A stretch of DNA of 64,000 nt, taken from assembly GCF_036588685.1 (NCBI RefSeq), contig NC_086378.1:29016001-29080000 (forward strand), read 5' to 3'. The position numbers and the translations under genes were made by a program. Below, piece by piece: positions 1-27,388 of this stretch. The number at the start of each line of letters is the position of its first letter. Positions within the stretch are counted from its first letter, which is position 1. The notes under the pieces are model-generated. The model was not told the origin of the DNA, made no database searches, and saw only the letters and a list, made by a program, of their open reading frames with translations. The stretch is from Mytilus trossulus (taxonomy: Eukaryota).

Positions 1-680
1 ATATTGTCACTGTCACATGATTATAACCATGGGAACACTGGTAACACTGGGCTGAAAATATATTGTCACTGTCACATGATTATAACAATGGGAACACTGG
101 GCTGAAAATATATTTTCGCATGATTATTATAATGGGAACACTGGGCTGAAAAAATAATGTCACATGATAATTATATTGGTAACACTGGGCTGAAAATAGA
201 GCCACATGATTATTACAATGGAAACACTGGGCTGAAAATAGAATGTCACATGATTATTACAATAGGAACACATGTAAAACTGGGCTGAAAAAATAATGTC
301 ACATGATTATTATATTGGTAACATTGGGCTCAAAATAGAGTGTCACATGATTATTACAATGGAAACACTGGGCTGAAAATAGAATATCACATGATTATAA
401 CAATAGGAATACTTGTAAAACTGGGCTGAAAATATAATGATATGAATATTTCAAAGCAAACACTGGTAAAACTAGACTAAACAAATATGATGTGACCTAA
501 TTTTAAAAGTACAAAATGATATTACATTAATTGGACACACTGGTAATACTGCATTGAAAATATAATGTCATATGGTTTTATAATGTATTCATCATTAGGA
601 CAATAACACTGAGGTAAAAATGTTAATTTCACATGATGAAGTACAATATCATATTCTGATGGGAACATTTATAACACTGA
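1..680. repeat. Degenerate minisatellite, ~50-65 bp units (gtcacatgattattacaatggaaacactgggctgaaaata), truncated by window start
   Basis: cacatgatt and ctgggctgaaa motifs recur about every 50-65 bp and decay toward ~680. Confidence 0.85.
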
Positions 681-1215: not shown

Positions 1216-2130
1216 ATGTAAGTCCTCACAAGTTAGGTTTATAGATATTTATCATAAGGATGATGAGTAATAATGTCAGACAAAAAATAATTTACATCAC
1301 AATTAGCACCTTATCTCTATGTGTTAAATGAAATCATTTCTTTTGTTTTCTGTCATATAAAAAACGTGATAAAGCTGACCTTAAGAGGTCTCTACACTAT
1401 GAGTCATACTCATGACTTGGTCTCCTTTCTTGTTTTGTTGATATTTCAGGCTGTTAATTTTCTCTTTTCAATTGTTTGGCATTTGCAGTTTCAGAGCAGT
1501 TATATATAGCTATGAGGTAATGGTTTTTCACATTGTTAAAAGCCCTATCATGACCTATAGATGCTAATTTCTTCGTCATTCGGACTCTGGTAGAGTCAGT
1601 TCTCTCATTTGTAATCATACCACAATATACTTATTTTAAAAACAAAATATTTCAAAGAGAAACCATTAATCCATTACTTGTGAAAGGACTGGCTTCCCTA
1701 AAAAAAATATATCAACAAATCGTTTCATTTTCTGGAAAACCATACGGAACACTTTGATAGTAAAATAAAACAAAGATTACTGAACATACCACTGATCAAC
1801 CCTTTCAGAAATTTCTGTAGTACACATGCACTAACAAAACTTTACTTCAGAACAGCAAAAGATTTTCACCTTATAGTATATATTAATTCTATGCTTCAAA
1901 TTCTTACATTGATGTGAAAATTGTGTTATTGCTTTTTTGTGTTCATAATTAGAAAACACGAGTAATACATGTTAGAAGAGCAATCGTATTCTAATAATGG
2001 TTTTTTGAATGAAGAATACCAAACTATATCTTAACCTTGAATGAGAAATGAACATGGGACTTGCACTTGCATATAAATGTTAATATTCTCACATTAAAAA
2101 AAAATAAAAAAATATTCTCACATTACATAG

Positions 2131-2352
2131 TACTGTAAATTCAGAAATTATAGCAATGTTTTCATTATTGCGAAAATACAACAGCCTGAACGGGGTTATA
2201 ATTGCAATATTAATTTCAACTCGCTTATTGAAATTCTTTATAAAGGATAATACAAGGATTTTCTCAATATGGCAAAAAATTAAATTGCATTTTAGTCTAA
2301 AATGACATAATCAAAATAATAAATGCCTATAATAATTTCTGATTTTACAGTA
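2131..2352. mobile_element. TA-flanked MITE; a related copy lies at ~9079-9293
   Basis: tactgtaaattcagaaattat ... ataatttctgattttacagta are reverse complements. Confidence 0.7.
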
Positions 2353-2559
2353 ATTATAGCTATAGTTTAATGATATAATACAAGTATCAAAATTTAAAAC
2401 AGTTCTTTTTGGTACTTAGAAATAATCAATTTGGCAAATATTTTTTTTTAAATTTTATATAAATTCAAGAATATACAGCTTTATTTCCCAAAAGTTGATT
2501 GAAATCTTACTCCAGCAATTCAACAGTAGATACAATAGCAAAATAAGCAAAAAAACTGG

Positions 2560-2910
2560 TACTCTTTGGAGGATAATAAGTTTAGAATCTTTATTTCAGG
2601 AGAAAAGTATGTCACAAGACCAACAAGCACCACCTTTTCTGATGTTGAAATTAGGCTGATTAGACTGTTACCCTTTTGAGGATAATAAGTTTAGAATCTT
2701 TATTTCAAGAAAAAGTATGGTAGACCAACAAGCTTGATATAACTTGTCTCTTTTGAGGATAAGTTTTTTTTAAATCAGGAAAAAGTATATGTCACTAGAC
2801 CAACAAGCACTAGAGGACTTGTCTCTTTTGAGGATAAGTTTTAAAAAAAAAATCAGGAAAGAGTATGTCACTAGTCCAACAAGCACGACAGGACTGTTCT
2901 CTTTTTCAGA
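2560..2910. repeat. Short degenerate tandem repeat (~4 units of 75-110 bp)
   Basis: Recurring ttttgaggataa(taa)gttt...aaaagtatgtcac(t)agaccaacaagcac. Confidence 0.7.
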
Positions 2911-5900
2911 TGCTAGTTGACAAACGTGACGTCCACTGATGTTAAACACCGTAGACATCAATACTTAATGTTTACAATGAGATTATGATAAATACTCAAA
3001 AGAACAATTAGAACCAACGTCAATGTACCAAAATCTTTATATTTACACGAACCCTAAGTACCAATGATGCCTTGGATGTAGGACACATCAATACACAGCA
3101 AGATGACAAGAAGTATAATACCCTAACATCCTGTCAACACAAATGTTTTAATTAGAAAATAAACAACAAAGTGTGTACTCCCACCGTTTTACAGGAAGTT
3201 GATCCAGATGGTACCTCTTCATGTCAAATACTATACTGACGTAAATCATATATAGTTGTATCCAGAAGTCAAGTCAAAATGACAGTATTGTTTGATTCTG
3301 ATAATTCTATCAAATATGGTAAGTCTCACATTTTTTTACATTTTTTCTATAAATTTACAGTTTACCATGTGTTATTTGAAACACTGGGGGATCAGAAAAA
3401 AAAATGTCAGATTAAGCAGGGTGTCGGAATACTCAGGCTTTTTATGCAAGGATATATGCAAATTTTTTTGGACCATGAAAATCTGTCAGTTAAAGCAGGA
3501 TATTTGAATACTCAGGTGTAGGATTAGGCAGATTGCACGGTATATATACCTATATATTACAGTTTATTGAATTTAACTGTGACCCTTAAATTCAATACAG
3601 CTCCACAGATGTTGTAGTTAAAATAATGACTCTCTTGAAATTTCTTAAGAATTTTCTACCCCTTTTTCTGCATAATAATTCAAGAATAAGGCCCAACATA
3701 AAATTAAAAAATGCAGAATCTTAAAAACATGTCTTATTCATTATGAAAGGCATGTAATGAAGTCTTTCTTTAATTTTTTAAAGTCTGATTGCCAAATAGT
3801 GTGAAATTCCCAATATATAACTTATTTTCTAAATAATTGCAACCAACCATTTTGAACTATAACCATACAAAAGTTAGTTATCTTCAGTTATACATGTTAT
3901 CAATCCAACACATAAAAACCTTGTGCTGCTATCAGAAAATTAAATGTTTTTTATTTATAAATATTTAACATGTTTTATATGTTTTAAAAAAACAATATGA
4001 TAGGTGGGTGGAAAATGGTTAGATTTTTTTTGCTTTAAACTGGTGTGGTTTCATTTTTGGCTTGATTTTCTATGTTTTTACGTTTTCGTTTCCTTTCTAT
4101 AATTTAAATGTAAATATGTTGATCAATATATTAAATAAATTAATAAATAAGTTATACCAGAGCTGTTATTATTTTATCTAATGTAATAATCTTGATTTAA
4201 CGATTACCAATATCCTGAAATAGGACTTTCATTTTGAGAAGTACAGTAAAAACTTTGTTTCATTCAAAAATTCACAAGAATTGGTATCATGGATGAATTA
4301 ATTGACAGAGGCAAGTGATATTTATAATTAATAACATAAGCATTATTTAATACAGTTAAACCAATCTTTCGTTACTTTTCTTTATTAAAATAGGCAGGCC
4401 AAATAATGTGCATTGGTCTTCCTCAATATGCATCAAATAACTTGCACTAGATGTTTAAATAGCGTAACAGTCGACAAATCATTAATTCAACCAAGAAGTT
4501 TTTAGCAGTAACAGGGGTGGATCCAGTCATTTTTAAAAGGGGGTCCCAACCCAGAATAAAATTGGGGAGGTCAATCCCCACAAAAAATAAAGGGGAGAGG
4601 GGGCAACAGTACATCCTTTTCAAATGCATTGTCTGTCCAAAAAAAAGGGGGGTTTCCAGGGATCACTTATCGAGTAAAATTTCTTATAAATCTAATATGG
4701 AAGTTGAAATCTCTTTGAACTGTAGTGTTAGTTAGTACTAGGATACCAGAAAACTCCACTAAACTCCCAAAAGTGTGAAATGAGGTCAAGGTCATACTTT
4801 GTAAAATAATTTTAGTTATTAGATGTTTTAAAGTTTCACATATTTCTTACAATGAGGAATGTGTTCATAGTTTTGTTTCTTCAGCTTAGCCTAGATCTGA
4901 ACAGAAATTTAAATTTACTTTTTTCATGTGACCTTATTTGGTAGGTTTTTACCTAAAATGGACCTTTTCCAAATTATAAATGTAATTGAATGACATAAAT
5001 ACAGTTCCTTGAAGGATACGTTAGGTCTATAATTGAAATGATGTTAATGAGATTAACTGACCAGCTTATCCATACAGCTATATATATATCAGGTGTTGAC
5101 AGATAGATAACCAATGTCAGTCACCTTAATGTCAAAGATAGTACAGTGCACTCAAAAAACTCTGGCGTATGGACACATATTTCTCTTATGGTATAAATAC
5201 CCACTTCTAAGACTGGAGCTGAATTCTTTCCGTAAAGACTTTTTGATGACTGGAACTTTTCTAGATAGTGAAATAAAATTGTGCAAAGAAAAGCCTCTTT
5301 ACTGAAAGACTTTTTGATGACTTTGGACAAGTCTAAGGTAAAATGAAAACATAAAGGAATATAAAGTTGGAATGAAAGATGCAAATAAAACTGGACATCT
5401 AAACTGTACAATGAAATAAATTATCAAAATACAGGTATCGTTTTTATTTATTTAATCACAATTTTATTGATAATACAATCTGTTTATAGGTTAAAGTATG
5501 TTTCTTTTCAAATTTAAATCAAGCAAACCATATTGAGGAATGTGATATTGCATATGTATATAAAAGGGAAATAACTCTTTAATAGTACAAATGTTAAGAT
5601 TGCATTAAAAATCAAATAAACATATGAAGCTTATAGACTAATACTTAAGTTTAAAAATACCTTTAGATATAAAAGTTTTCAACATTTGTTATTTTACTGA
5701 TTTTTCAAGTAAAAAAATGTAATTTGGACTTTGATATTCAGAAACTGGCAGGGGTGGGGGAAATGCTTTGGTTACTTAAAATTCTCCATTACTATAAAGT
5801 GCCAACAGAACTTATTCATCCTTGTTTTCAAAATTCCAATGAGAACATACTTCATATAATTGTATAAATAAACCATTTTTTCTTTTTTTCAAGACGTTTT

Positions 5901-12300: not shown

Positions 12301-15300
12301 AAAAAGATTCAATTTTTTTCCAATACAAAAATTTACTACTGATTCTTTAAATATTTTATATATCAAAGCAATAACTTCATACTGAATTGATAATATCAAG
12401 AAAGAAATTCCAAAATATATATCAGAATCATTTTTTTGTTTGTGAGGGTCATATATATCCATATTTATGTTTTTGTGCAGTTCTTACAGACTATTTTTGC
12501 TTTTACAACTGTAGACTTTTTATTGTACCAACATTTTTTAATCAAGAAACATAAGTAATTCATAATTTTAAGCGTTTATGAATTATTGATTTTTCAATGT
12601 GTAAGCATACATGTAGTCAAGTTTTTTGTAAATGTGGTTTATAAGTGATTAATATCTTATTTCATATATTTTAAGAAGGCCATATAAAAAGAATTTCCTG
12701 TTATATATTTATCATACCACTTATATTATATCAAATTTTACTTAAAAATCATTTTCAGGTGATTGATTTTTTAATACATTTACATCAATATAAGGTTTCC
12801 TGCATAATCTAAATCTGGGTTAAATTGTTGTCACGAGTTTACTCGTTTATCTACTAAATAAACGTAAATATTTATATCCTTTTACTTCTGTACAACATTA
12901 AAAACAAACTTAATCTTGAACTTGTGATAAATTTAAATAACATTGAAAGTTACAAAGTCAAAGTATTTATACTATTATCAAATTGTAAACTGCATAAAGG
13001 TTTCTAAACTACTTTATCTTGATGAACTTTAAGGTCATAACCTAAAAGTACTGTTTAAAATATGTTAACAAATTTGAAAATGTCTTTAATGCTTTAGTTC
13101 ATGAAGTTCTGACAAAAAACTTATATATATATTATAAAGGGCACTTTGCATGGAGGATGAATATAGAAAAAAAACAAGAATGTGTCCATAGTACACAGAT
13201 GCCCCACTCACACTATCATTTTCTATGTTCAGTGGACCGTGAACATTGGGGTCAAAACTTTAATTTGGAATAAAATTAGAAAAATCATATCATAGGGAAC
13301 ATGTGTACTAAGTTTCAAGTTGATGTAACTTTAACTTCATCAGAAACTACCTTGACCAAAAACTTTAACCTGAACTTCGCACTATCATTTTCTATGTTCA
13401 GTGGACCATGAAATTGGGGTAAAACTATAATTTGGCATCAAAATTGGAAAGATCATATCATGGGGAACATGCGTACTAAGTTTCAAGTTGATTTGACTTC
13501 AAATTCTTCAAAAAAAACCTTGAACAAAAACTTTCACCTGAAGCAAACGAACGCACAGACGGACAAACGGAGGCACAGACCAGAAAACATAATGCCCCTC
13601 TACTATTGTAGGTGGGGCATAAAAAATCATAAAATGACTTATTCAAGAGTGTTTTATTGTTGTTCTTCATGCTAACATTTGCTAGAGGTATTTACTGATG
13701 AGCAAAATGGCTAAATAGGTCATTGCTGTTCTTCATTTTAACATTTGCTAGAGACATTCACTGATGAACAAAATGGCTCACAACATACAGCAAAGCCAAG
13801 ACACCTACATATACCATTGACAACATAGATCTATGTTATCTGATATGCTTAAGTTTTAAGAAATATTCTTAAAGAGATGCAATGTTGTGCAATATGTATT
13901 TTTTACCTACAATTTTCTTTAATTATTCTATCAGGTATAAAGTTATAGGGTGTAATCATCAATGCTTGTATTTGTTTATTTTGACAGGAATGAAATTATG
14001 GGGTGTAATTAACAATGCTGGTATTTGTTTATTTTAACAGGTATGAAGTTATGGTGTGTAATAATCAATGCTGGTATTTGTTTATTTCTACAGTTATGAC
14101 GTTAAGGGGTGTTATTTACAATGCTGGTATTTGTTTATATTTACAGGTATGAAATAATAGGTTTTTTATACAATGTGTTTTTTTATCTATTTTGACAGTA
14201 TTTACAATGCTGGTATTTGTTTATATTTACAGGTATGAAATTATAGTTTTTTATACAATGTGTTTTTTTATCTATTTTGACAGGTATGAAGTTATGGGGT
14301 GTAATTAACAATGCTGGTATATGTTTTATTGGTAATGTTGAGATGATGGTAACAGAAGACATTCATAAAATATTAGCTGTGAATTACCTAGGACCAGTGA
14401 CTGTGTGTAAACACTTCCTACCTCTACTCAGAGAAAGTCAAGGCAGAATTGTCAATGTAGCAAGCAACTGTGGTAAGCATTGATTGATGGTGAAACACAA
14501 AAAAAAAAAAATCTGGCTATTTTCTATTATTTCACCAAGAGTTTTCACAAATGATGACAATAACTAAGATAAAAGTGCGGTCAGCCCAATTTTTTTTAAT
14601 TTGGTCAGAATTAAGGATTTTTTTTATGCCATGCAATTGGCTTTTTGACTGATTGATACAAACTACAATTTGGCAATTTGGTCAATGCTATATTTAATGT
14701 CAACACTTGCATTTTAATCTTAGTAATACATGTAATATATCACAGTTATTTAATATTTGATACAAGAAAGTGACTTAAGTTCATTTTTAACTTTACAAAA
14801 TTGTTTAAAAAATTCCTTTGGTGGTTGTTTTGCATTGCTATCAAATAATTTCATTGCATATTTTCGCCAACAAGAAAAACAAAACTGTCAATGTTTTACT
14901 TTTAGGCCTGGCACCTGTACCACTAATGGGACCATACTGTGCTTCTAAGTCGGCACTGGCTACGATGTCAGAAGTATGGAGATATGAATTCAAAATGTGG
15001 AAGATAAAAGTCTGTACTATCATTCCTAGTGGATATAAAACAGGTTAAATATAATTATTTCTTATGAAGCAAGAATCTTACAACTAGATATATGTAGGCT
15101 AATTATCAACCCAAGTTAGCTATAATCATATTAAATTTCTGTAATTTTATAGGGATTTGTGATATGGACTCATAAAGGAAAATTTTCCATGATCATGATG
15201 TTATGGAAAAATACAAACACTTAATTAAATAATATATAACTAACAGGTCTTTATTTAAAATACATTTATGGAAATGTGGTAAGATTACCAATGAGATAGC

Positions 15301-16552
15301 TATCCACTAGAGCTCAAATAAAGATGATGTAAAATGCATTGTTCTCTGCAATCTATAAACTGCGCAAATGATTAATTGGATAAAGTTCTGTTAATTCTTC
15401 AAAATAACCACATGCCCAGTAGCATGGCAGAACGAATTGTTTGTCTACAAATAAAAATTGGGTTAAGGTACATAAGGGATACTGAACTAGATATTTTTTT
15501 ATTAAGTATGAATTGAAGTATGAACAAAGATAGTCATTTATGATTCTCAAGTAATTCAATAAAAAACTGACAAATAGTATTGCAATTATAAAGAAATTCA
15601 ATGAATATAAATTAAAACTGCAAACAGGCAATGTAAGTTTGAGATCTACACAATCTCCTATGCCATTTTTTTTCATAAACATTTTTTTTTGAAATTTTTA
15701 GGTATTATGGCTTATGACAAGGCTGCAGTGGCAGAAAGGTGGTGGAAAGGGGCAAGTAAATCTGTCAAAGAAAATTACGGCAAAGACTGTTTTTACATTA
15801 AACATAAGCTTAAAGGTATATCTAATTCTTTTCCCATTTTCTCTATATAATTTTTTTTTAAATCACACTTTTATTTTCTTATTCATGTTATTCTAAATCA
15901 ATGTAAGAATGATATAAATTTCTGATACTTTTCCTTCAAATTAAAATTATAAATAAATATATCACAATAAGTCTCAGTACTGTTATCAACTTTCAATTGC
16001 ACTGACATTTTCTAAGCAATTTAAAATCTCAACTTGTTATTGTCAACATATAAACAATATTTGTTGGTCATGATGACTTTGAACATTGTTGTAGACAATG
16101 TCAGAACTAAGAAGATTGTTATGTCAAAGGAGAAAATGCTTGCAATCAAATTATAACTAAAATTGCATATTTCTTCAATTAATCAGTATCACAATATCAC
16201 TAAAAAACGTTAATTAAATGTTCCAGAATTTGAAACAGTAATTTGATCTACTAAATAAAGAAAAGGAAAACTGTAAAAAAAAAACTCAATAGTCATATTT
16301 TCATGTTTTCTCTTTTCAGATCCAGAAGCTTATCTGAACCCAGACTTCACTGAAATTTTAGACAACATAAAATTAGCACTATTGTCAGTCAGTCCAAAGT
16401 CTCATTATTACAGTGGATTACTTTCAAGGGCATTGCCGTTCCTCTACCTGCATCTACCATCCTGTATTGGAGACAGAGTCATGTCTATAATGGTAAACTG
16501 GTTTGACTTTGTACCAAAAGCTTTATCACCGCAGCCTAAATCATGTCACTGA
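6351..16552 (+). CDS. Membrane-anchored classical SDR, SDR9C-type (17beta-HSD2/11beta-HSD2/RDH/BDH1-like), ~402 aa; coding exons 6351-6672, 10906-11118, 14284-14472, 14906-15043, 15702-15815, 16320-16552
   Basis: All introns GT-AG and phase 1; frame open across every junction to TGA at 16550-16552. Motifs: hydrophobic N-terminus, IIITGCDRGIG (TGxxxGxG), LDV, LWGVINNAG, RIVNVAS, YCASK (YxxxK). Start ATG could be 6351 or a later in-frame Met. Confidence 0.93.
11146..12125. repeat. Intronic minisatellite: ~7 near-perfect 54-bp units followed by degenerate ~47-bp units sharing the core aatgaccttgaaatgt...aatacatgtc
   Basis: Unit aatgaccttgaaatgtcaggttaatacatgtcaaaggtggaaaggtttgtaaat repeats directly; it accounts for the repetitive ORFs 11115..11990. 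Confidence 0.95.
13172..13625 (-). mobile_element. Non-autonomous Helentron-type (HINE/pearl-like) element with two ~170-bp internal units; shorter relative at 17884-18140
   Basis: Subterminal IR atgccccac / gtggggcat, gacg/gaca microsatellite, duplicated actatcattttctatgttcagtggacc unit, A/T-run flanks. Confidence 0.7.
13925..14283 (+). repeat. Tandem array (~53 bp x7) of duplicated SDR intron-2/exon-3 junction
   Basis: CAG at 13932, 13985, 14038, 14091, 14144, 14196, 14230 and 14281, each followed by variants of gtatgaagttatggggtgtaattaacaatgctggtat. Confidence 0.9.
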
Positions 16553-18222
16553 TTAACAGTTGTTTATAAATGACAATAAAATATCAACAGTGCCGTTAAA
16601 TCAAAACATTGAATGATTGATTGAAGACTGTTTAATCAAAATATTGTAACCTCAGGACAAGAACAATTGGTGCATAAATAATTTATAACAAGAACAGAGC
16701 TGTGATAATTGGATAGCCGCACACATGATGTATGGATTTGATGAACAGCTAAAACAGTATTGTTTTAATTGTCTATATATTGTAAGACTGAATTTTATAT
16801 ATTGTAAGACTGAATTTGTTACTATTCAAAATTTTCAAATCATTTAAATTCAAATAATAATTATAATTGATTAAATATCTGTTAAATAATTTTCTCAAAT
16901 GAATTTAAAAAAGAATCATGTTTCATATCAAACAGATACTTAACTGTTATAGCAATTACAGATGGCGACAAAGGGAGCTTATCAAATTATGAAATTCAAA
17001 GAAGTAAAAAAACAATAAGAAACAAGCAAGAACCTTACTTGGTAAAATAAATCATTCCTTATAGTCCAATTTTCAATTTAATAAAGAAAAAAAGAAAATT
17101 TGGAGATACACTTCTAGTTTCTAAATCAATTAAATGTTAAGTGTTTGTCTTCAAACTGATTAAGTGAATTATAAACATATTGAGTGCCTTTACACAACCT
17201 TCATTCTGAGATGAATATTGTTAATTTTATTTTTTGTTTGTGTTTCAAAATGAAGCTTATTTATTTACAAGCTCTCTATTTTTATATTACACCTCACATG
17301 CTATTTTTTTGTCTTTTCAAGATACCTAAATCAAATATATAATTGCAAATGTTCTTTTTATTGTATTTTTATCATATTATTATGGTGGAATATGTAATTT
17401 CAAAAGGTCAAATGTAAGAATGGGTACAGAAAGTATAAAACTTCTGGATGATCACTTTGACTGAAAATACATTGTAGACAATTTTATAAGACTTGTACAT
17501 ACAATACACTGAAAAAGTGTCAATCTCTTTACAAAATGATGGTTTGAATTGAATGAGTGATTTATGTAAAATGCAAACAGTTGTCTTGAGTTTGTGCTAG
17601 TCAGAATTAGACATACCGGTAATTTATTTATTTAGTCGTTTTTTATTTTGTTAAATATATAATTTATATTATTTGTTGTTATAGTATGTTGAATGTTAAA
17701 AATAAAATGTTAAAAAAAAATGATTGTTTGTATTGAAATTACCATTAGAAATGAACTACAGCTATCTATGTGTCTGAACTGTCATACGCAGAAAAAACTT
17801 CAATACACAAAAAAGTTTGAAACCCTGACATCTTGAATGAGAAAAATTATAATTTTCTCTAAACAATGTCACCTAGGGGAAATAACAAGAATGTGCAGTA
17901 CACAGATGCCCAACGCACACTATCATTTTCTATGTTCGGTAAATTAAGGTAAAAACTCACAAATAATTAGAAAAATCATAACATAGGGAACATGTGTACT
18001 AAGTTTAAAATTGGTTGTCCTTCAACTTCATCTAAAGCTACCTCGACAAAAAACTTACACCTGAAAAGACCAGACAGATGGTTAAATGAACAGACGTACA
18101 GACAGAAAACAACAAAATGCCCTTAGGTGGGGCATAAAAAACACTTTTCAAATTAATAAAACCACATCCATGTGTATCTCCCTTTCAGTAAATTTTCACA
18201 CATTGAAATTAATTCTACTTAC

Positions 18223-21200
18223 ATTCAACCCCTGCCTGTCTTTTAACATGATCTACAAACTTGGTCCTCGATGAGAACAGTCCTCCACAGGTTGGACAAG
18301 CTATCACTTTCTCCTGTGTATGACTTCTTAGATGTTCACGTAGTTTATACTTATTTTTAGCAACAGTCTCACACCCTATAATGATAAGAATGAGTCAATC
18401 AGTTAGAAAGCCTACAATATTTCTATCGTAAATTGGTTTTACTAAAACTGCATATGTAATAATTAAGACGTCTAAACTGTATGAATTTGTATTGATGACT
18501 AAAGTACAAGATAACATCATAAGTACACAACGTTGGATATACAATAATGCCGCGTCACGTTAACGTTCTCTTCTGTGCATGATTTCCAACATTCTCCGGC
18601 CCACGAAAAGTGAAAATATAAAACTTGTAAAATAATTTAAAGTCTCTTTGTTAAAATATTAATATGAAATTGACTTTAAAGTCCATCATTAAAATTAAAA
18701 CTTTTACCACAGTTCTTATAGTACGGTGTCACATTTCGTTCAAGTTCTTTTTTCTGGTAAGTTTCTCCCTGTAATCCAATTCCTGGTATAATTTAAACTG
18801 TTTGAACTGAGATTTAGATTTTTCCATTCCTTGTAAATCATCGTAAAAGTGTGTGTGGTGGTTTGTGTCTCTTGTCCACATTAAAGCTGATTTGTTTGTT
18901 CCATTTTCTGTCAACAGACCATTGTTTCTTTGTTTTGTTCTTGAAGTGTCCACAATTGTTGAAATAAGTTCAGTGTTAATAGTATTCTCTGTTTTCTCCT
19001 CGGTAGTGTGTATCTCTTCTGTTACATTGATTGAACTGGTTCTTTTGAGTGGTCCTGAAAGTAGGTATCCTAGTTTGGACTTTACTGCTGTTGGTCCCTC
19101 CCCCCTAATAATATCATCCTCGAAAATATCCCAGTATTGGTCAGCTCCAACAAGCAGTCCAATTTCAAATGATGTATCCTCAGTTACGGCGTGTTCTAAT
19201 GTTAAGTTTTGCAAATACGGTAACTTTCTTGCAGTTTCAATGTAAGCCTTGAATGGTGCGGCGATTTTAGGTTCAATTAAGACATCTACTGAAATATGGT
19301 CGCCATGAATAGTTTGGGAAGACATCAAAAGTTCAATGAAGGATAAAAAACTTAATTCACATAGTTTTTTCACTGACCCCCACACCCCCCCCCCCCTCTT
19401 AACCTAATTTGGGAAAAATTGATTGACCAATAGGGATATATGTAAAATCGATTTTAGATTAACACAACTTGCAGCAATGTTGACCCCCCACCCCCAAACT
19501 ATTTGATTTAAGTTTCTTATCCTACATCGATCTTTTGATGTCGTCCCTTACTGTTGCTGTGTTTAGCTGTTCAATAGAGTTGTTCTCATTATCGTCTCCA
19601 AATCTAGATAGCATAATTGCTTCACTTCCTATGGGTTTTAACTCCAATTTCTCTCCTAAATGTCTTGTTATAAATGACCTTGTGGCGCCTTCGTCAAAAA
19701 GGATCTTTGCATCAGTCGTTTGTTTTCTGTAGCTTAGCGGTGCAATTGCGGTCTTTAACAAGACATTTGGGCAATCACGGTCTAGAGATGAATATAAAAC
19801 TGTTGTCTCAGCTTCCTCCGCGTTGTGTGTTCGTACTGTCAGGGTTGGCAAAGTATTACCCGCCCGGGAATTCCTACTTGTAGTTGCAGTTTCTTTATCA
19901 TAGTCGTTGTTGCATAGGCTTGTGTGGTGACGTCTATCACATTTCTTGCAGTTGGATATACAATAATGCCACGTTACGTTAACGTTCTCTTCTGTGTGTG
20001 ATTTCCAACAATTTCTAATATTGAGACTGAGAAAGATATGATATATATAATGCGGTTGTATTAATTATGACGTAAAAGAATAAAAGTGAAAGTGAAAATG
20101 TAAAATAGTGTTCATAATGTAGCAAGAATAAAAGTTAAGTTGCTAGTGGTAATATTGTAGAAATGATGGAAGTGGCTCATAAAATGTCAGTTCATTTCCA
20201 AATTGGACAACACCCCATTGGCCATCCCGTACCAATTCAACTGGCTTTGCTCCGAGGGAGGTACTGCTTCCATTGAATTAGTAAAAGGTGAAGTGTATGA
20301 TCGCCGCAATTCTTGGAATTGTAAATCTTGGTAGATATGTTCGAGGTATTGTAGGTGGTTCTGGCTGCGGATGAACAGTCAGAAGAATGACTAGACAGGT
20401 ACATGAGATACAACTAGAGGCTCTAAAGAGCTACACATGTTGCTGACCTTGGTCTTTATGAGTATATACATATTCAACAAAGGACACGCTTCAAAATCAT
20501 GAAAATTATAAACAGGAATAGAATTTATGCAAAAAAAATCTTTTTTTGTTGTTGTTGTTGATCCATTTGTCTGGCTAGTTTCTATTTATCTTCTTGAGCT
20601 TTTGCTCAAAACACAAAAGGGGGTAAAAAAATCCTCATTAACAGCAATCACTCCTATAATATATTGACACTCTACTAACTGTACTATCAGCAAAATTTAC
20701 TTGTTAGTAGATCTTGTCTTTTTTATCATTTTAGCTTATTTATTTAAGTTTCTATCTATTTGCAGATTTGAAGATCTTGTCTGGATAATCCTTTTTGCAT
20801 CTCTATCTAGCATGAATATAGAATACACAAAAAAATAAAAATAAAAAAAAAATAAAAATATAAAGAATTGTCATCAAAGGGCAATAACTCTAATTGGGAT
20901 TCAACTAACATTTTAACCAGGAAGAACTTGCCTTGCTGATATAGTTTTTGCAATTCCAATTTTCTCTCTTTCTATAATAGTTTCTTAAAATAAAAAGCAG
21001 AAACTTATCAAAGAAAAATGGTAAAACTTGGCATATAAAGGTGATAACTTCTATAAGAAATCAACTGACATTTTTGACATCATGAACAATTGGTAGAGCA
21101 TAGCATTCTAAACATCTAATAGTTATCAAAAGTACCAGGATTACAATTTTATACCCCAGACACGCGTTTCGTCTACATAAGACTCATCAGTGACGCTCAT

Positions 21201-24200
21201 ATCAAAAAAGTTAAAAAGCCAAATAAATACAAAGTTGAAGAGCATTGAGGACCCAAAATTCCAAAAAGTTGTGCCAAATACGGCTAAGGTAATCTACTCC
21301 TGGGGTAAGAAAATCCTTAGTTTTTCGAAAAATTCTCAGTTTTGTAAACAGAAAATTTATAAAAATGACCATATAATTGATATTCATGCCAACACCGAAG
21401 TGCTGACTACTGGGCTGGTGATACCCTCGGGGACGAAACGTCCACCAGCAGTGGCATCGACCCAGTGGTGTAAATAGTTATCAAAAGTACCAGGATTACA
21501 ATTTTATACGCCAGACGCGCGTTTCGTCTACATAAGACTCATCAGTGACGCTCATATCTAAGCCATGCCAATTTTTCTCTATATACATGTATGGCGATTA
21601 TCGACATTATAGTAGACAAAAGTGACATTCTACCACTATGATCAATTTTTAGCCATGTTGCTCATCTTGATCAGCAGGTGGGTCATGAAAAAAAGGTTTT
21701 AAAACTAGATACCCAAATTATGATTCTGGTCAAGTTTCAAAGTAGTTTCAGAGAAGATTTTTGTAACTTTAAAATAAACAGATGACAACAGACACAAAGT
21801 GATGAGAAAACCTCACTTGGTCTATTGGGCCAAATGAGCTAAAATTTAAAGTAATAGTAATATAGCGCATACTTTTAGAGTGGAGTATAATATATATAAT
21901 GTGTAATAATGTTTTGTAAAATGTAACCATTACCTTCCCATTCACACCTCGCTCCGTGTTCCAAATTATTTCCCTCAGGAAATGTCTCTGAATGGTTATC
22001 TACATGGCGGTAAAATATCTCTGGATTGTCAATTATCGTCTAAAATTAAATGTAGGAAAAATGAAAGTTGTATTTTAGTTCTACCCTTCTCATGGTAAAT
22101 ATAAGCAATTAATTTCATGTGAACTTCTCCCAGTGGGACTTTAGATTTGAATCTGAGTAGATAATTTTGTTTACAATAATATTGTGCCCTTTGCTAAATT
22201 GAAAATAATAACAAGAATATTCCTTTAAAAGATAATAAGGAGTTGTTGTTGCTGATCAGACTATATTTTTATGTGTGTGTATTTCTTGTATTTCTCCCTC
22301 AGGCAAAGTTGGCCTTAGATGGAATAGGCTATTTTCAAGGTCTTTTTTAGTTTATATTGCTCTTCAATTGTTTCAGTTATACTCATACTTGACTTTCAAA
22401 TATTTGGCAATGAGCGTTCTTGATGAAGGTAAGTAAATCAAGAAAAGCGCTTAGGATGCATACATTTATAACTGTTTTTATTTTGTACCTCACCTCACAC
22501 ATATTCCAGCCACACTGGAGTCTTTCTGGTAACTCTGGTATCAAGTTACGACTTTGATTCTCTAACAAACATCCCCTTAAACCCATCTTACGTATCATCT
22601 GCTCTCCTATATTCTTAATTTTGACATGAAAACAATGGAAGTAGGCATGACGAAGAAAATCTGTTCTACGTCCCTGGACCATTGTGTTACATTCTCTCCA
22701 CTCACATGGGAACTCTCCATCTGAAATATAAACAACAGTCTCCTATATCAAATATAAATGATACCATGCATATAAAGAAGGTTGGTACCTATTCATACAT
22801 TTAAATCTGTTGCATTTGTTAGCACTTGTATTAAGTCAGAAAGTTGATGTTCAGTACTTAATGTTTGTTGATGTGGTTCATAAGAGTTTCTTGTTTTTTT
22901 ATATAGATTAGACAGTTGGGGTTCTTGTTTGAATGGTTTTACACATGTCATTTTTGGGGCCATTAACAGCTTGCTGTTCGGTGTGAGCCAAGGGTCTGTT
23001 ATGAAGACATATTTTGACCTATAATTGTTTACTTTTACAAATTGTGACTTGGATGAGAGAGTTGTCTCATTAGAACTCATACCACATTTTCCTTTATATA
23101 CATATACCTAAAGGATCATCCAGAAGGCGCATATATATTACAAAGCACTAGACATATTCACATAAAAAAGAAACACGGCAATGCATAAAGCTTAAGTTTC
23201 ATTTTAATATGAGTGTCCTACAGAAAATATAATTATCTTAGAAAATGAGCCAAATGTTGACAATTTAAGGTAGTTCTGTTGTACAACAAACATCCCTTGT
23301 ATCTTTGACCATTTCCATCATATATTTTTGGTTTTAGAATTGACTTTAATCTATCATGTTAATTACTTATGTCATCAATATCATCTTGTCTCCATTTACT
23401 CTCTAAGATCAAGATATTTCTCAATATCAATTGTATCATCATGATCATGATGATAATGAGTCTAAATGGAGAGAATTCAAGCAACAATAAGTCACCATAC
23501 AGCCTTCAACAAAGAGAAAAATTCATACCATATAACTAGTGAACTACAAAAGCCCACGCATGACAAAAGGTGATACAAATAAAAACTAGAGGCTCTAAAG
23601 AGCCTGTGTCGCTCACCTTGGTCTATGTGAATATTAAACAAAGGACGCAGCTTGATTCATGACAAAATTGTGTTTTGGTGATGGTGATGTGTTTGTACAT
23701 CTTAATTTACTGAACATTCTAGCTGCTTACAATTATCTCTATCTATAATTAACTTGGCCCAGTAGTTTCAGAGGAGAAGATTTTTGTAAAACATTACTAA
23801 GTTTACGAAAAATGGTTAAAAATTGACTATAAAGGGCAATAACTCCTAAATGGGTCAACTGACCATTTCGGTCATATTGACTTATTTGTAACTCTTACTT
23901 TGCTGAACAATATTGCTGTCTACAGTTTATCTCTATCTATAATAATATTCAAGATAATAACCAAAAACAGCAAAATTTCCTTAAAATTACTAATTCAGGG
24001 GCAGCAACCCAACAATGAGTTGTCCGATTCATCTGAAAATTTCAGGGCAGATAGATCTTGACCTGATGCACAATTTAACACCATGTCAGATTTGCTCTAA
24101 ATGCTTTGGTTTTTGAGTTATAAGCCAAAAACTGCATTTTTCCCCTATGTTCTATTTTTAGCTGTGGCAGCCATCTTGGTTGGTTAGCAGTCACGAAAAA

Positions 24201-26069: not shown

Positions 26070-26547
26070 TTTCTTCTATTTATTCTGTAATGAAAAAAAA
26101 GAAAATGGCTTTGAAGGTGAAGTACATGTAACCTGTTTCTGCACATCTTGCATGGTTTATATTTTTTGTTTAATATCATAGCTTGGTACAGGTGCATTCA
26201 TATGACCTTGAAGTTCTACTACTTGATTACATATGGTTACAATAAAACTACCCAAGTTTGTCAGGAGTGTAACAATCGAGTTAAGATGTTATTTTTTAGA
26301 AACACTGTAGTCATACTTGTTGTTTGTTCTTGAATTTTCCGTGAACAGTATCTGCTGCAAGGCATTTACTATTTTGTCAAAACTATGAAGGTACCAGTCT
26401 TGTATTACAACTCCAGTTTCCAGTGCATGTCAAAACATGGAGAGAAACAAAATAGTCCATTTTTTTCTGATTTTTTTTCAGAACTCAATTTTTCAGTTTG
26501 ATTTATAGGATTGTGCTGAATTGAAACATATATATATATATATATAA

Positions 26548-27037
26548 AAAGCAAATTTACAGATCTAACATTGTTGGGTTGATGTTTAGACGAGTTGTAT
26601 ATACATTATGTACACAGCCATGTATCACCATCATTGATGGCGATCCGATGGACACATCTGTTGTAGGGTTGTCACTGACTCAGACGTACTTATGAATATA
26701 ATTATTTTCTGTGACTGTATCTTACATTAATTTGTAGGATCCTTTACTATAGATAATTTAGCTGATCTGTAACAATAACATCTTCATGCCTTATATATCA
26801 TGTACTGTAGTACGCCGCTAGATTAAAACTGACGAGGAAAGGTAACATATGCCCACCGAAAGCTCTTTTTTTGAGAGCCCAGGTGGTCGTGTGGTCTAGC
26901 GGGACGGCTGCAGTGCAGGCGATTTGGTGTCACGATATCACAGTAGCATGGGTTCGAATCCCGGCGAGGGAAGAACCAAAAATTTGCGAAAGCAAATTTA
27001 CAGATCTAACATTGTTGGGTTGATGTTTAGACGAGTT
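26548..27037 (+). mobile_element. Circularly permuted 441-bp tRNA-derived SINE-like unit with a minimal hammerhead, inserted in (TA)n
   Basis: Perfect 49-bp terminal direct repeat (26548-26596, 26989-27037); CTGACGA..GAAAGCTC at 26829-26865; T7 at 26866-26872; A box TGGTCGTGTGG 26884-26894; B box GGTTCGAATCC 26951-26961. Confidence 0.8.
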
Positions 27038-27388
27038 ATATATATATATATATATATACTAAATTACAATTTCACATTAGTACAAATGTAGTACATACAT
27101 GATATGAACATGTATTTTTTTTCAATGTAGCTTTTTAATTTATTTATTTTCAAAGATCAGCTGTTTTGCATATAAGCCTATTGAGCAGTCTATTACAAGA
27201 CTGCAACCTGGAGAGGCTAGACAGAAACTTATACATGAGATATTATTTAGCACAGGATCATAAAATATTGATTTAGAACTTTTATTGTCAATAGAAAATA
27301 AAGACAACTACTCTGTCTCTAATGAAACACTAATGAGAATTACACCGTTTTGATTAAAAACAGTCTTGTTATTTTTTAATTTTTCTTG

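What the first reader, a model, noticed from the sequence alone, without database searches (positions are those of the whole stretch)
26548..27037. Permuted Pol III SINE-ribozyme unit: hammerhead + T7 + tRNA-like promoter, inserted in (TA)n
Seen: between two (TA)n tracts lies 1.11 copies of a 441-bp unit, with a perfect 49-bp terminal redundancy. Inside, on +, is taaaa CTGACGA gg..ggta-acata-tgcc..cc GAAA GC TC ttttttt, a minimal type I hammerhead with a nearly absent stem III. It is followed directly by T7 and a tRNA-like head with A and B boxes. Known: minimal hammerheads of this type occur in Penelope-like elements, and Schistosoma Sm-alpha combines a tRNA-derived promoter with a hammerhead. 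Inference: the natural order is promoter-body-ribozyme-terminator. This copy starts mid-body and wraps around, as expected from reverse transcription of a circular or multimeric RNA. It may be a self-transcribing, self-cleaving, microsatellite-targeting retroelement family; I do not know it as described in bivalves.
Basis: partly seen in the sequence, partly recalled or inferred. Interest (0 to 1): 0.8.

Follow-up and report, generated by a model that had tools for sequence, protein, structure and literature searches.

The report
tRNA-headed Penelope-type tandem retroelement, hammerhead unsupported
This is one copy of a very abundant, young and transcribed non-coding mobile element of a mussel-like genome that a Penelope-like retrotransposon probably copies into (TA)n tracts. 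Its hammerhead-ribozyme look comes from one recent base change in a minority subfamily and is not a conserved working part.

Summary
Window 26548-26988 is a 441-bp unit, followed by a perfect repeat of its first 49 bp, lying inside a (TA)n tract.

Genome-wide, the family has at least 4,093 insertion 3' ends and at least 5,400 units.
- **3' end:** fixed, at ...GTTTAGACGAGTTG(TA)n.
- **5' end:** truncated at variable positions.
- **Length:** about a third of insertions exceed one unit, and arrays reach 20 or more units.
- **Neighbours:** inverted copies often lie alongside.

[quoted passage not shown] RNA is abundant, strand-specific and confined to the element. Insertion 5' ends cluster just upstream of the tRNA-like A/B boxes, which fits a Pol III-type start.

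The hammerhead reading fails as a family feature:
- 86% of genomic units, about 90% of RNA reads and nearly all old copies read CTGACGT, not CTGACGA.
- The CTGACGA subfamily is nested and derived in the tree.
- The motif region is among the least conserved parts of the unit.
- No RNA ends or insertion ends pile up at the predicted cut.

Verdict: a new variant of a known kind, resembling Sm-alpha and animal retrozymes but with no conserved ribozyme. Other first readers of this scan flagged what look like copies of this family on other DNA.

The parts
26528..26546 (.). Left part of the (TA)n target tract
   Evidence: TRF (AT)9.5. In about 60% of sampled insertions the 5' flank is also (TA)n.
26548..26988 (+). 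One complete 441-bp unit (unit positions 1-441)
   Evidence: Matches are 97-100% identical genome-wide, mostly in tandem arrays with a 441-bp period.
26989..27037 (+). Second lap: unit positions 1-49, ending at the family's fixed 3' end (...GTTTAGACGAGTT, then TA repeats)
   Evidence: The same 3' junction occurs 4,093 times in the genome. All sampled arrays end here.
27037..27058 (.). Right part of the (TA)n target tract, merging with the unit's own GTATATA patch
26829..26865 (+). Hammerhead-like motif CTGACGA...GAAAGCTC. A26835 (core position A9) is a derived base of a 14% subfamily.
   Evidence: About 90% of RNA reads have T at 26835. The local minimum-energy fold does not form the hammerhead. 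No Rfam hit.
26866..26872 (+). T7 run (T5-T8 in other subfamilies), a putative Pol III terminator that most sampled RNA reads through
   Evidence: At least 896 reads in X21 span it, and depth there is 960-1240 against 1000-2500 elsewhere.
26873..26878 (+). Hot spot of insertion 5' ends (unit 327-331), the putative transcription start
   Evidence: 161 TATATA-adjacent matches (about 120 loci) against 17 for window 315-319 and 85 for 336-340. 4 of about 55 sampled insertions start here. RNA loose ends lie at 26874 and 26876.
26877..26979 (+). Degenerate tRNA-like head with A box 26892-26902 and B box 26951-26961
   Evidence: Sequence. ARAGORN calls it only at 80% threshold with an intron. The B box is 94% conserved in old copies.
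26980..26999 (+). Hairpin AAATTTGC-GAAA-GCAAATTT. cDNA often stops in its loop or 3' arm, which gives this copy its 5' end at 26548.
   Evidence: Sequence. 5'-end hot spots at unit positions 1-2 and 8-9, about 9 of 55 sampled insertions, including 41-49-bp tail-only insertions.
27000..27037 (+). Tail ACAGATCTAACATTGTTGGGTTGATGTTTAGACGAGTT, the most conserved part of the unit and the likely recognition and priming region. An internal copy lies at 26559-26596.
   Evidence: 95.6% conserved in old copies against 87% for the body. The TTAGAC plus 2-5 nt plus (TA)n ending is shared with a PLE and with family B.
26679..26703 (+). Minor alternative 3' end and priming site, CTCAGACGTACT followed by TA-rich sequence
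   Evidence: About 10% of junctions read ...CTCAGACGTACT(TA)n. 3' ends at unit positions 142-153 appear.

Best explanation
This is a copy of a young, high-copy, non-coding retroelement that depends on a Penelope-like element. Each 441-bp unit carries, in order: a degenerate tRNA-derived head with Pol III A/B boxes, a GNRA hairpin, a conserved tail ending in TTTAGACGAGTTG followed by a short UAUAUA patch, about 260 nt of body, and a T-run just upstream of the next head.

Inferred mechanism. The PLE endonuclease nicks a (TA)n tract. The freed (TA)n end pairs with the UAUAUA patch inside the RNA rather than at an RNA end. The PLE reverse transcriptase then copies towards the RNA 5' end over a template longer than one unit, either circular or multimeric. 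It stops at variable places, preferentially in the hairpin or at the RNA start near unit 328.

The window copy is one full lap plus 49 nt: start at the UA patch, once round, stop in the hairpin loop.

Shown: the anatomy, copy numbers, fixed 3' and variable 5' ends, multi-lap insertions, uniform arrays, strand-specific RNA, and the non-conservation of the hammerhead motif. Inferred: the identity of the PLE partner, Pol III use, internal priming, and the form of the template. The hammerhead look of this copy is read as an incidental single T-to-A change.
For: Structure.

Abundance and ends: 4,093 3' junctions against 0 for the control. In 50 loci taken in genome order, 5' ends are spread over the whole unit, about 35% of insertions exceed 441 bp, and many are followed by inverted truncated copies. 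These are the PLE hallmarks listed in PMC8557442.

Template: insertions of 1-2 units, such as this one, cannot arise by unequal crossover, so the template exceeded one unit. Units within an array are near-identical (0-0.3 differences) and share array-private unit lengths of 442 or 443 bp, while arrays differ from each other by about 3.75.

Partner: ORFs with RYIDD followed by a C-terminal GIY-YIG domain (PF01541, E 5e-6 and 2e-7) have a 3' UTR ending TTCTTAGACATT(TA)n. There are 171 such tails, 91 of them exact, several touching unit insertions (one search compared). A second 3' site in the unit also reads AGACG followed by TA-rich sequence.

Conservation: the tail is the most conserved region, at 95.6%.

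RNA: depth is 1000-2500 on one strand against 10-90 on the other and about 0 in the flanks. The family is held by three coded organisms and by fish-gut metatranscriptomes.

Start site: the 5'-end hot spot at 327-331 is about 5-fold over expectation.

Against the hammerhead.
Against: Homology between the unit and the PLE is limited to TTAGAC plus 2-5 nt plus (TA)n. No longer similarity was found, and at least one other (TA)n-targeting PLE family with a different tail exists (L007/L008).

Most RNA reads run across the T7 run. This is odd for a Pol III unit, so another polymerase or weak termination is possible.

The 328-330 hot spot lies in the 3' arm of a weak hairpin (GCTCT/AGAGC) and could be a reverse-transcriptase stop rather than an RNA start.

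The RNA strand call rests on the usual dUTP convention and was not calibrated.

The RNA pool is dominated by two older subfamilies, and the most abundant genomic subfamily is nearly absent from it. Units are therefore not equally active, or the RNA comes from a different population.

Circular and multimeric templates cannot be told apart with short reads.
Confidence: 0.7

Rival explanations
1. This is a Pol III-driven retrozyme whose minimal type I hammerhead, acting as a dimer through the palindromic AGCU, cuts multimeric transcripts into 441-nt monomers. These are circularised and reverse-transcribed. At most this could apply to the CTGACGA subfamily, where the motif would be newly born.
For: In this copy and in 770 units the full core is present: CTGACGA and GAAA, a palindromic AGCU helix III, H17 = C, and a 4-5 bp A-U helix I. 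The architecture resembles the min-HHRs of PLEs (PMC4209133). A descriptor fitted after the fact gave 0 hits in 300 shuffles of the window. This subfamily is very young and forms long arrays. The RNA test was too insensitive for a variant at about 10% of reads.
Against: 86% of units and about 90% of RNA reads have U at core position A9. Those units form arrays and multi-lap insertions just as well. A288 is derived. The older consensus also lacks helix I pairing and the inner helix II. GAAA and the 3' half of helix II are poorly conserved, and the variants at 26850, 26852 and 26856 are not compensatory. Only about 11 loci have 5' ends at 315-319, of which 2-3 are exactly at 319, against about 120 at 327-331. 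The hammerhead is not in the local minimum-energy fold, and Rfam finds nothing.
Confidence: 0.1
2. A SINE-derived satellite. An ordinary tRNA-derived SINE or repeat was turned into tandem arrays and spread mainly at the DNA level, by unequal crossover, extrachromosomal circles or recombination at (TA)n. Reverse transcription over a multi-unit template is not involved.
For: Arrays of 20 or more uniform units are what unequal crossover also yields. SINE-derived tandem arrays are reported in bivalves (PMC11481361). (TA)n tracts are recombination-prone.
Against: There are thousands of separate loci, each with the same 3' end and a different 5' truncation, from 41 bp upward and including many of 1-2 units. 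This polarity is typical of target-primed reverse transcription. The same (TA)n tracts hold PLE tails of the same type. RNA is abundant and strand-specific. DNA-level growth of arrays after insertion is not excluded.
Confidence: 0.1
3. A rolling-circle (Helitron-like) DNA transposon that inserts at A|T dinucleotides and leaves tandem copies.
For: Insertion lies within TA repeats and the copies are head-to-tail.
Against: There are no TC...CTRR termini and no 3' subterminal hairpin at the fixed end. On the strand carrying the tRNA head, the 3' end is fixed and the 5' end variable. No Rep/helicase partner was seen, whereas PLE ORFs abut the same tracts.
Confidence: 0.02

Closest known systems
Schistosome Sm-alpha / Sj-alpha SINE-like elements (Ferbeyre et al. 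1998; summarised in PMC6765202)
   Same: A repeat of a few hundred bp, both dispersed and in tandem. It carries a tRNA-type Pol III promoter with a hammerhead(-like) motif next to it, and a tandem arrangement is needed so that an upstream unit can transcribe a downstream one.
   Different: Sm-alpha hammerheads are conserved and cleave. Here the core is absent from 86% of units and from the ancestral sequence. This family has a fixed (TA)n-embedded 3' end and PLE-style truncation, and it occurs in a bivalve.
Animal non-LTR retrozymes, including those of Mytilus galloprovincialis (PMC7229834; PLE origin proposed in bioRxiv 10.64898/2026.07.22.740005)
   Same: Non-coding tandem units of a few hundred bp with low GC, highly expressed, thought to be copied by PLEs from circular or multimeric RNA.
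   Different: Retrozymes are defined by a conserved type I hammerhead in each unit, and no Pol III head is reported for them. This family has a tRNA-like head and no conserved ribozyme. The window holds a classical retrozyme of another family at 21118-21558.
Penelope-like elements with (TA)n insertion bias and their min-HHRs (PMC8557442, PMC4209133)
   Same: 5' truncation, partial tandems giving terminal repeats, adjacent inverted copies, a short tail extension, and (TA)n targets. The motif in this copy has the min-HHR layout.
   Different: The unit encodes no protein and shares only a TTAGAC...(TA)n ending with the PLE found here.
tRNA-derived SINEs of bivalves, some in tandem-like arrays (PMC11481361, PMC4758252)
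   Same: A tRNA-related head with A/B boxes, a microsatellite-ended tail, and occasional direct and inverted arrays.
   Different: Those SINEs are paired with LINEs (PMC11481361 does not contain the word 'Penelope'), start at the head and end at the tail. Here most copies run on past the head into a further 260-nt body, and 3' ends lie inside the repeat unit.

Membership tests
Hammerhead ribozyme (minimal type I, PLE type) | Conserved CUGANGA box | tested here: not met
   Present in this copy and in 770 units. 4,622 units read CUGACGU. About 90% of RNA reads have U. Old copies are 27 U to 2 A. A is derived.
Hammerhead ribozyme (minimal type I, PLE type) | Conserved GAAA box and helix II kept by compensating changes | tested here: not met
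   GAAA and the 3' half of helix II are below 85% conserved in old copies. The variants at 26850, 26852 and 26856 break pairs without compensation.
Hammerhead ribozyme (minimal type I, PLE type) | Self-cleavage 3' of H17 (after 26865) | tested here: inconclusive
   No pile-up of RNA ends at 26865/66, and depth is continuous. No insertion 5'-end hot spot at unit 319. The RNA test is insensitive for the 10% CTGACGA variant, and a religated circle would leave no ends.
Hammerhead ribozyme (minimal type I, PLE type) | Match to curated covariance models | tested here: not met
   No hammerhead family even at E<=10. These models also miss the canonical-looking hammerheads at 21118-21558 at gathering score, so this counts for little.
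Animal non-LTR retrozyme | Non-coding tandem units of a few hundred bp, AT-rich and highly expressed | tested here: met
   (no ORF in the unit).
Animal non-LTR retrozyme | One conserved type I hammerhead per unit | tested here: not met
   See the hammerhead rows above.
Animal non-LTR retrozyme | Monomeric circular RNA | not testable with these tools
   Short reads across the unit junction fit both tandem DNA and circles.
tRNA-derived SINE | Internal Pol III promoter (A and B boxes) in a tRNA-related head | tested here: inconclusive
   The B box is a perfect GGTTCGAATCC and the A box matches 9 of 11. The B box is 94% conserved. A tRNA fold is called only at 80% threshold with an intron, and Rfam tRNA does not hit.
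tRNA-derived SINE | Full-length copies start at the transcription start just upstream of the head | tested here: inconclusive
   A hot spot lies at unit 327-331, but most insertions run past it into upstream unit sequence.
tRNA-derived SINE | 3' tail shared with an autonomous partner | tested here: inconclusive
   Only TTAGAC plus 2-5 nt plus (TA)n is shared with a PLE.
Element mobilised by a Penelope-like retrotransposon | 5' truncation, partial tandem (terminal repeat), adjacent inverted copies, (TA)n bias | tested here: met
   The criteria are from PMC8557442.
Element mobilised by a Penelope-like retrotransposon | Dependence on the PLE RT/EN | not testable with these tools
   Needs a retrotransposition assay. 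Only co-location and the shared ending are shown.

The most novel reading that the evidence does not exclude
Tandem multi-lap insertion does not need a ribozyme. A Pol III-type, tRNA-headed RNA with no working hammerhead is still copied round and round by a Penelope-like RT, from a circle made by a route that does not use a ribozyme or by repeated template jumping. In one young subfamily a single T-to-A change has just created a complete minimal hammerhead, which would be a ribozyme caught at birth.
Probability: 0.12. Interest if true: 0.8.

Novelty: new variant of a known kind. Interest (0 to 1): 0.5.

Why it matters
Animal retrozymes are thought to owe their tandem structure to hammerhead-made RNA circles. 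This family shows the same tandem, multi-lap and polarised insertion pattern at several thousand loci, although most of its units and its ancestor lack the hammerhead core. The pattern may therefore belong to the Penelope-like copying machinery (internal priming at a UA patch, laps round a template) rather than to the ribozyme. The family would also be a tRNA-headed partner of a PLE, whereas the bivalve SINE survey checked here pairs its SINEs only with LINEs. With thousands of near-identical copies, abundant RNA and a candidate young PLE partner, it is a practical system for testing how PLEs prime and why they make tandems.

Tried and rejected
- **Rfam.** The locus at E<=10 and the whole window at gathering score gave no ribozyme or tRNA family.
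- **ARAGORN.** Default settings found nothing. Only relaxed thresholds gave a weak tRNA-like call.
- **Longer homology.** blastn with word size 7 between the unit, the PLE 3' UTR and family B found nothing beyond the terminal motif.
- **Strict hammerhead descriptor.** The first version missed even the window motif. The second was fitted to it, so its zero background overstates significance.
- **Larger unbiased sample.** The 5'-end histogram therefore rests on 50 loci plus genome-wide pattern counts.
- **Protein atlas.** The look-up of the PLE ORF failed.
- **Earlier scan notes by sequence.** Nothing was found.
- **Helitron reading.** Rejected on termini and polarity.
- **RNase Z cut after the tRNA-like head.** Considered as the cause of the 5'-end hot spot at unit positions 1-2. 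It is about 10 nt off, so this was left as a hairpin stop.
- **Literature.** Searches found no described PLE-dependent tRNA-headed SINE in bivalves. From memory only, Mytilus ApaI satellites were said to carry A/B boxes; that paper is not in the library and was not checked.

Full report
**1. Observation**

Window 26548-26988 is a 441-bp unit. 26989-27037 repeats its first 49 bp exactly, or 59 bp at 97%. The element sits between (AT)9.5 at 26528-26546 and (TA)11 at 27037-27058.

The + strand reads aaaaCTGACGA-ggaaaggtaacatatgcccacc-GAAA-GCTC-TTTTTTT at 26825-26872. A stretch with an A box (26892-26902) and a perfect B box (26951-26961) follows.

Curated models do not call it. Rfam gives no hammerhead or tRNA even at E<=10. 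ARAGORN gives nothing at default settings and a weak, intron-containing tRNA only at 80% thresholds.

**2. The family in its own genome (G000, 1.30 Gb)**

The unit gave at least 214 matches at 97-100% identity, mostly in head-to-tail arrays with a 441-bp period and up to 20 or more units.

The 3' junction GATGTTTAGACGAGTTG(TA)n occurs 4,093 times, against 0 for the reversed control. Each match marks one independent insertion.

I took 50 loci in genome order, which is an unbiased sample. They show:
- The 3' end is always at unit positions 49-57, where the unit's own GTATATA merges with the target (TA)n.
- About 10% of insertions instead end at a second site...CTCAGACGTACT(TA)n, near unit position 143.
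- The 5' end falls anywhere in the unit.
- About 35% of insertions are longer than 441 bp.
- Truncated inverted copies often lie alongside.

This matches the published description of Penelope-like element (PLE) insertions: high 5' truncation, partial tandems giving pseudo-LTRs, adjacent inverted copies, a short tail extension and a (TA)n bias (PMC8557442).

Insertions of 1-2 units, like the window copy, cannot be made by unequal crossover, so the template was longer than one unit.

Units within an array are nearly identical (0-0.3 differences) and share array-private unit lengths of 442 or 443 bp. Arrays differ from each other by about 3.75 positions. This fits repeated laps over one template sequence.

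**3. Where cDNA stops**

5' ends cluster in two places:
- At unit positions 1-2 and 8-9, inside the hairpin AAATTTGC-GAAA-GCAAATTT. About 9 of 55 sampled insertions end here, including tail-only insertions of 41-49 bp.
- At unit 327-331, just upstream of the tRNA-like head.

Genome-wide counts of TATATA-adjacent 5' ends, per 5-nt window, are:

| Window (unit positions) | Matches | Distinct loci (approx.) |
|---|---|---|
| 327-331 | 161 | 120 |
| 336-340 | 85 | 55 |
| 315-319 (includes the predicted hammerhead cut at 319) | 17 | 11, of which 2-3 exactly at 319 |

The window copy is therefore one lap that began at the UA patch and stopped in the hairpin loop. This explains the exact 49-bp redundancy.

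**4. The hammerhead**

- CTGACGA occurs in 770 units and CTGACGT in 4,622.
- In the unbiased sample every unit read CTGACGT.
- Copies below 95% identity are 27 T to 2 A.
- In a tree rooted on old copies, the CTGACGA subfamily is nested within CTGACGT lineages.
- The older consensus...CTGACGTGGAAAGGTAACACCCGGCCACCGAAAGCTTCATTTTTA, also lacks helix I pairing and the inner helix II.
- Across old copies the motif region is 81.5% conserved. The tail is 95.6%, the B box 94% and the body 87%. The GAAA box itself varies.
- The local minimum-energy fold does not form the hammerhead.
- A descriptor fitted to the motif had no hits in 300 shuffles. It was built after the fact, and the older consensus would not satisfy it.

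I conclude that the motif in this copy was completed by one recent T-to-A change. It is not a conserved working part. CTGACGT units make arrays and multi-lap insertions just as well.

**5. RNA**

Three coded organisms and fish-gut metatranscriptomes hold the family.

In two stranded runs, depth on the element is 1000-2500 for one orientation, 10-90 for the other and about 0 in the flanks. By the usual convention this is RNA of the + strand, the strand of the head and tail. I could not calibrate the convention.

No ends pile up at 26865/66. At least 896 reads in X21 span the T7 run, so most sampled RNA is continuous across the 'terminator' and the putative start. This means multimers or circles, and it is odd for a simple Pol III unit.

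At 26835, about 90% of reads carry T. The pool is dominated by two older subfamilies. The most abundant genomic subfamily is nearly absent from it.

**6. Likely copier**

[quoted passage not shown] This is a canonical EN+ PLE of Neptune-like layout.

Its 3' UTR of about 330 bp ends ...GTTTTAGTTATATTCTTAGACATT(TA)n. This tail occurs 171 times, 91 of them exact, often in inverted pairs and several times touching unit insertions (one search compared).

The unit (GTTTAGACGAGTTG), a second roughly 430-bp non-coding family B (TTTAGACTCG) and other short repeats share TTAGAC plus 2-5 nt plus (TA)n, but no longer homology. The partnership is inferred, not shown.

**7. Comparison and verdict**

The layout of promoter plus hammerhead(-like) motif in tandem SINE-like repeats is that of schistosome Sm-alpha (PMC6765202). 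Tandem non-coding units copied by PLEs are animal retrozymes, already described in Mytilus (PMC7229834; bioRxiv 10.64898/2026.07.22.740005). Minimal dimeric hammerheads are a PLE feature (PMC4209133). Bivalve SINE surveys pair SINEs with LINEs and do not mention PLEs (PMC11481361).

This family fails the defining ribozyme feature of retrozymes and of Sm-alpha, but it works like them in every other tested respect. I file it as a new variant of a known kind.

Earlier notes of this scan describe other retrozyme families of this genome as PLE-mobilised. They also list first-reader flags, not followed up, of tRNA-head-plus-hammerhead elements elsewhere in the genome. Those are probably the same family, but I did not verify this. 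That the genome is a mussel rests on those notes and was not checked independently.

Noticed in passing
L031 575-1005 (minus strand); fragments in L004, L006, L009, L010: Family B is a second non-coding element of about 430 bp that targets (TA)n. Its tail is ...GTTTTCAGTTTAGACTCG(TA)n and its 5' ends are truncated at variable positions. It often abuts the 441-bp family. It carries a hammerhead-like stretch, CTGAAGA-GACATTAATTGTC-GAAA-TCCAGATCTGG, with a palindromic helix III, but G sits where H17 should be.
   Followed up: partly
L032 minus strand (about 1537-3027) and L033 1-875: A young PLE with a C-terminal GIY-YIG endonuclease. Its 3' UTR holds CTGATGA-AGCTAATTTGTTTAGC-GAAA, a hammerhead-like motif about 120 nt before the TTAGACATT(TA)n end. 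Its fold and conservation were not examined.
   Followed up: no
window 21118-21558 (minus strand): A classical retrozyme of another family with two canonical-looking type I hammerheads (CTGATGAGTCTTATGTAGACGAAACGCGTGTC). It is not in a (TA)n tract. Rfam at gathering score reports nothing anywhere in the window, so the curated hammerhead models miss it.
   Followed up: partly
window 26835-26856, RNA runs X21 and X22: Expression is skewed by subfamily. The subfamily that is commonest in the genome (CTGACGT...ACATATGGCCACC) is nearly absent from RNA, while two older subfamilies dominate. This could be silencing of young arrays, a few master loci, or a population difference.
   Followed up: partly
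L007 / L008 minus strand, next to the unit's (TA)n: A second PLE family (ORF with a GIY-YIG match near threshold) whose 3' end reads ...TAATAATTTTCTT(TA)n, without TTAGAC. At least two PLE families therefore target (TA)n in this genome.
   Followed up: no
window 26711-26748 and 26832-26888 (RNA joints): Recurrent 36-nt and 55-nt skips appear in RNA reads. The 55-nt skip removes the hammerhead-like motif, the T7 run and the putative start, at a CGTG microhomology. These are most likely deletion-variant genomic copies rather than processing.
   Followed up: no
window 14952-17580 (minus strand): A long stop-free stretch in two frames (856-868 codons) made of a short tandem repeat (...SVYSHRTVFVSHCTIKT...). 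It is a minisatellite, not a gene, by appearance.
   Followed up: no
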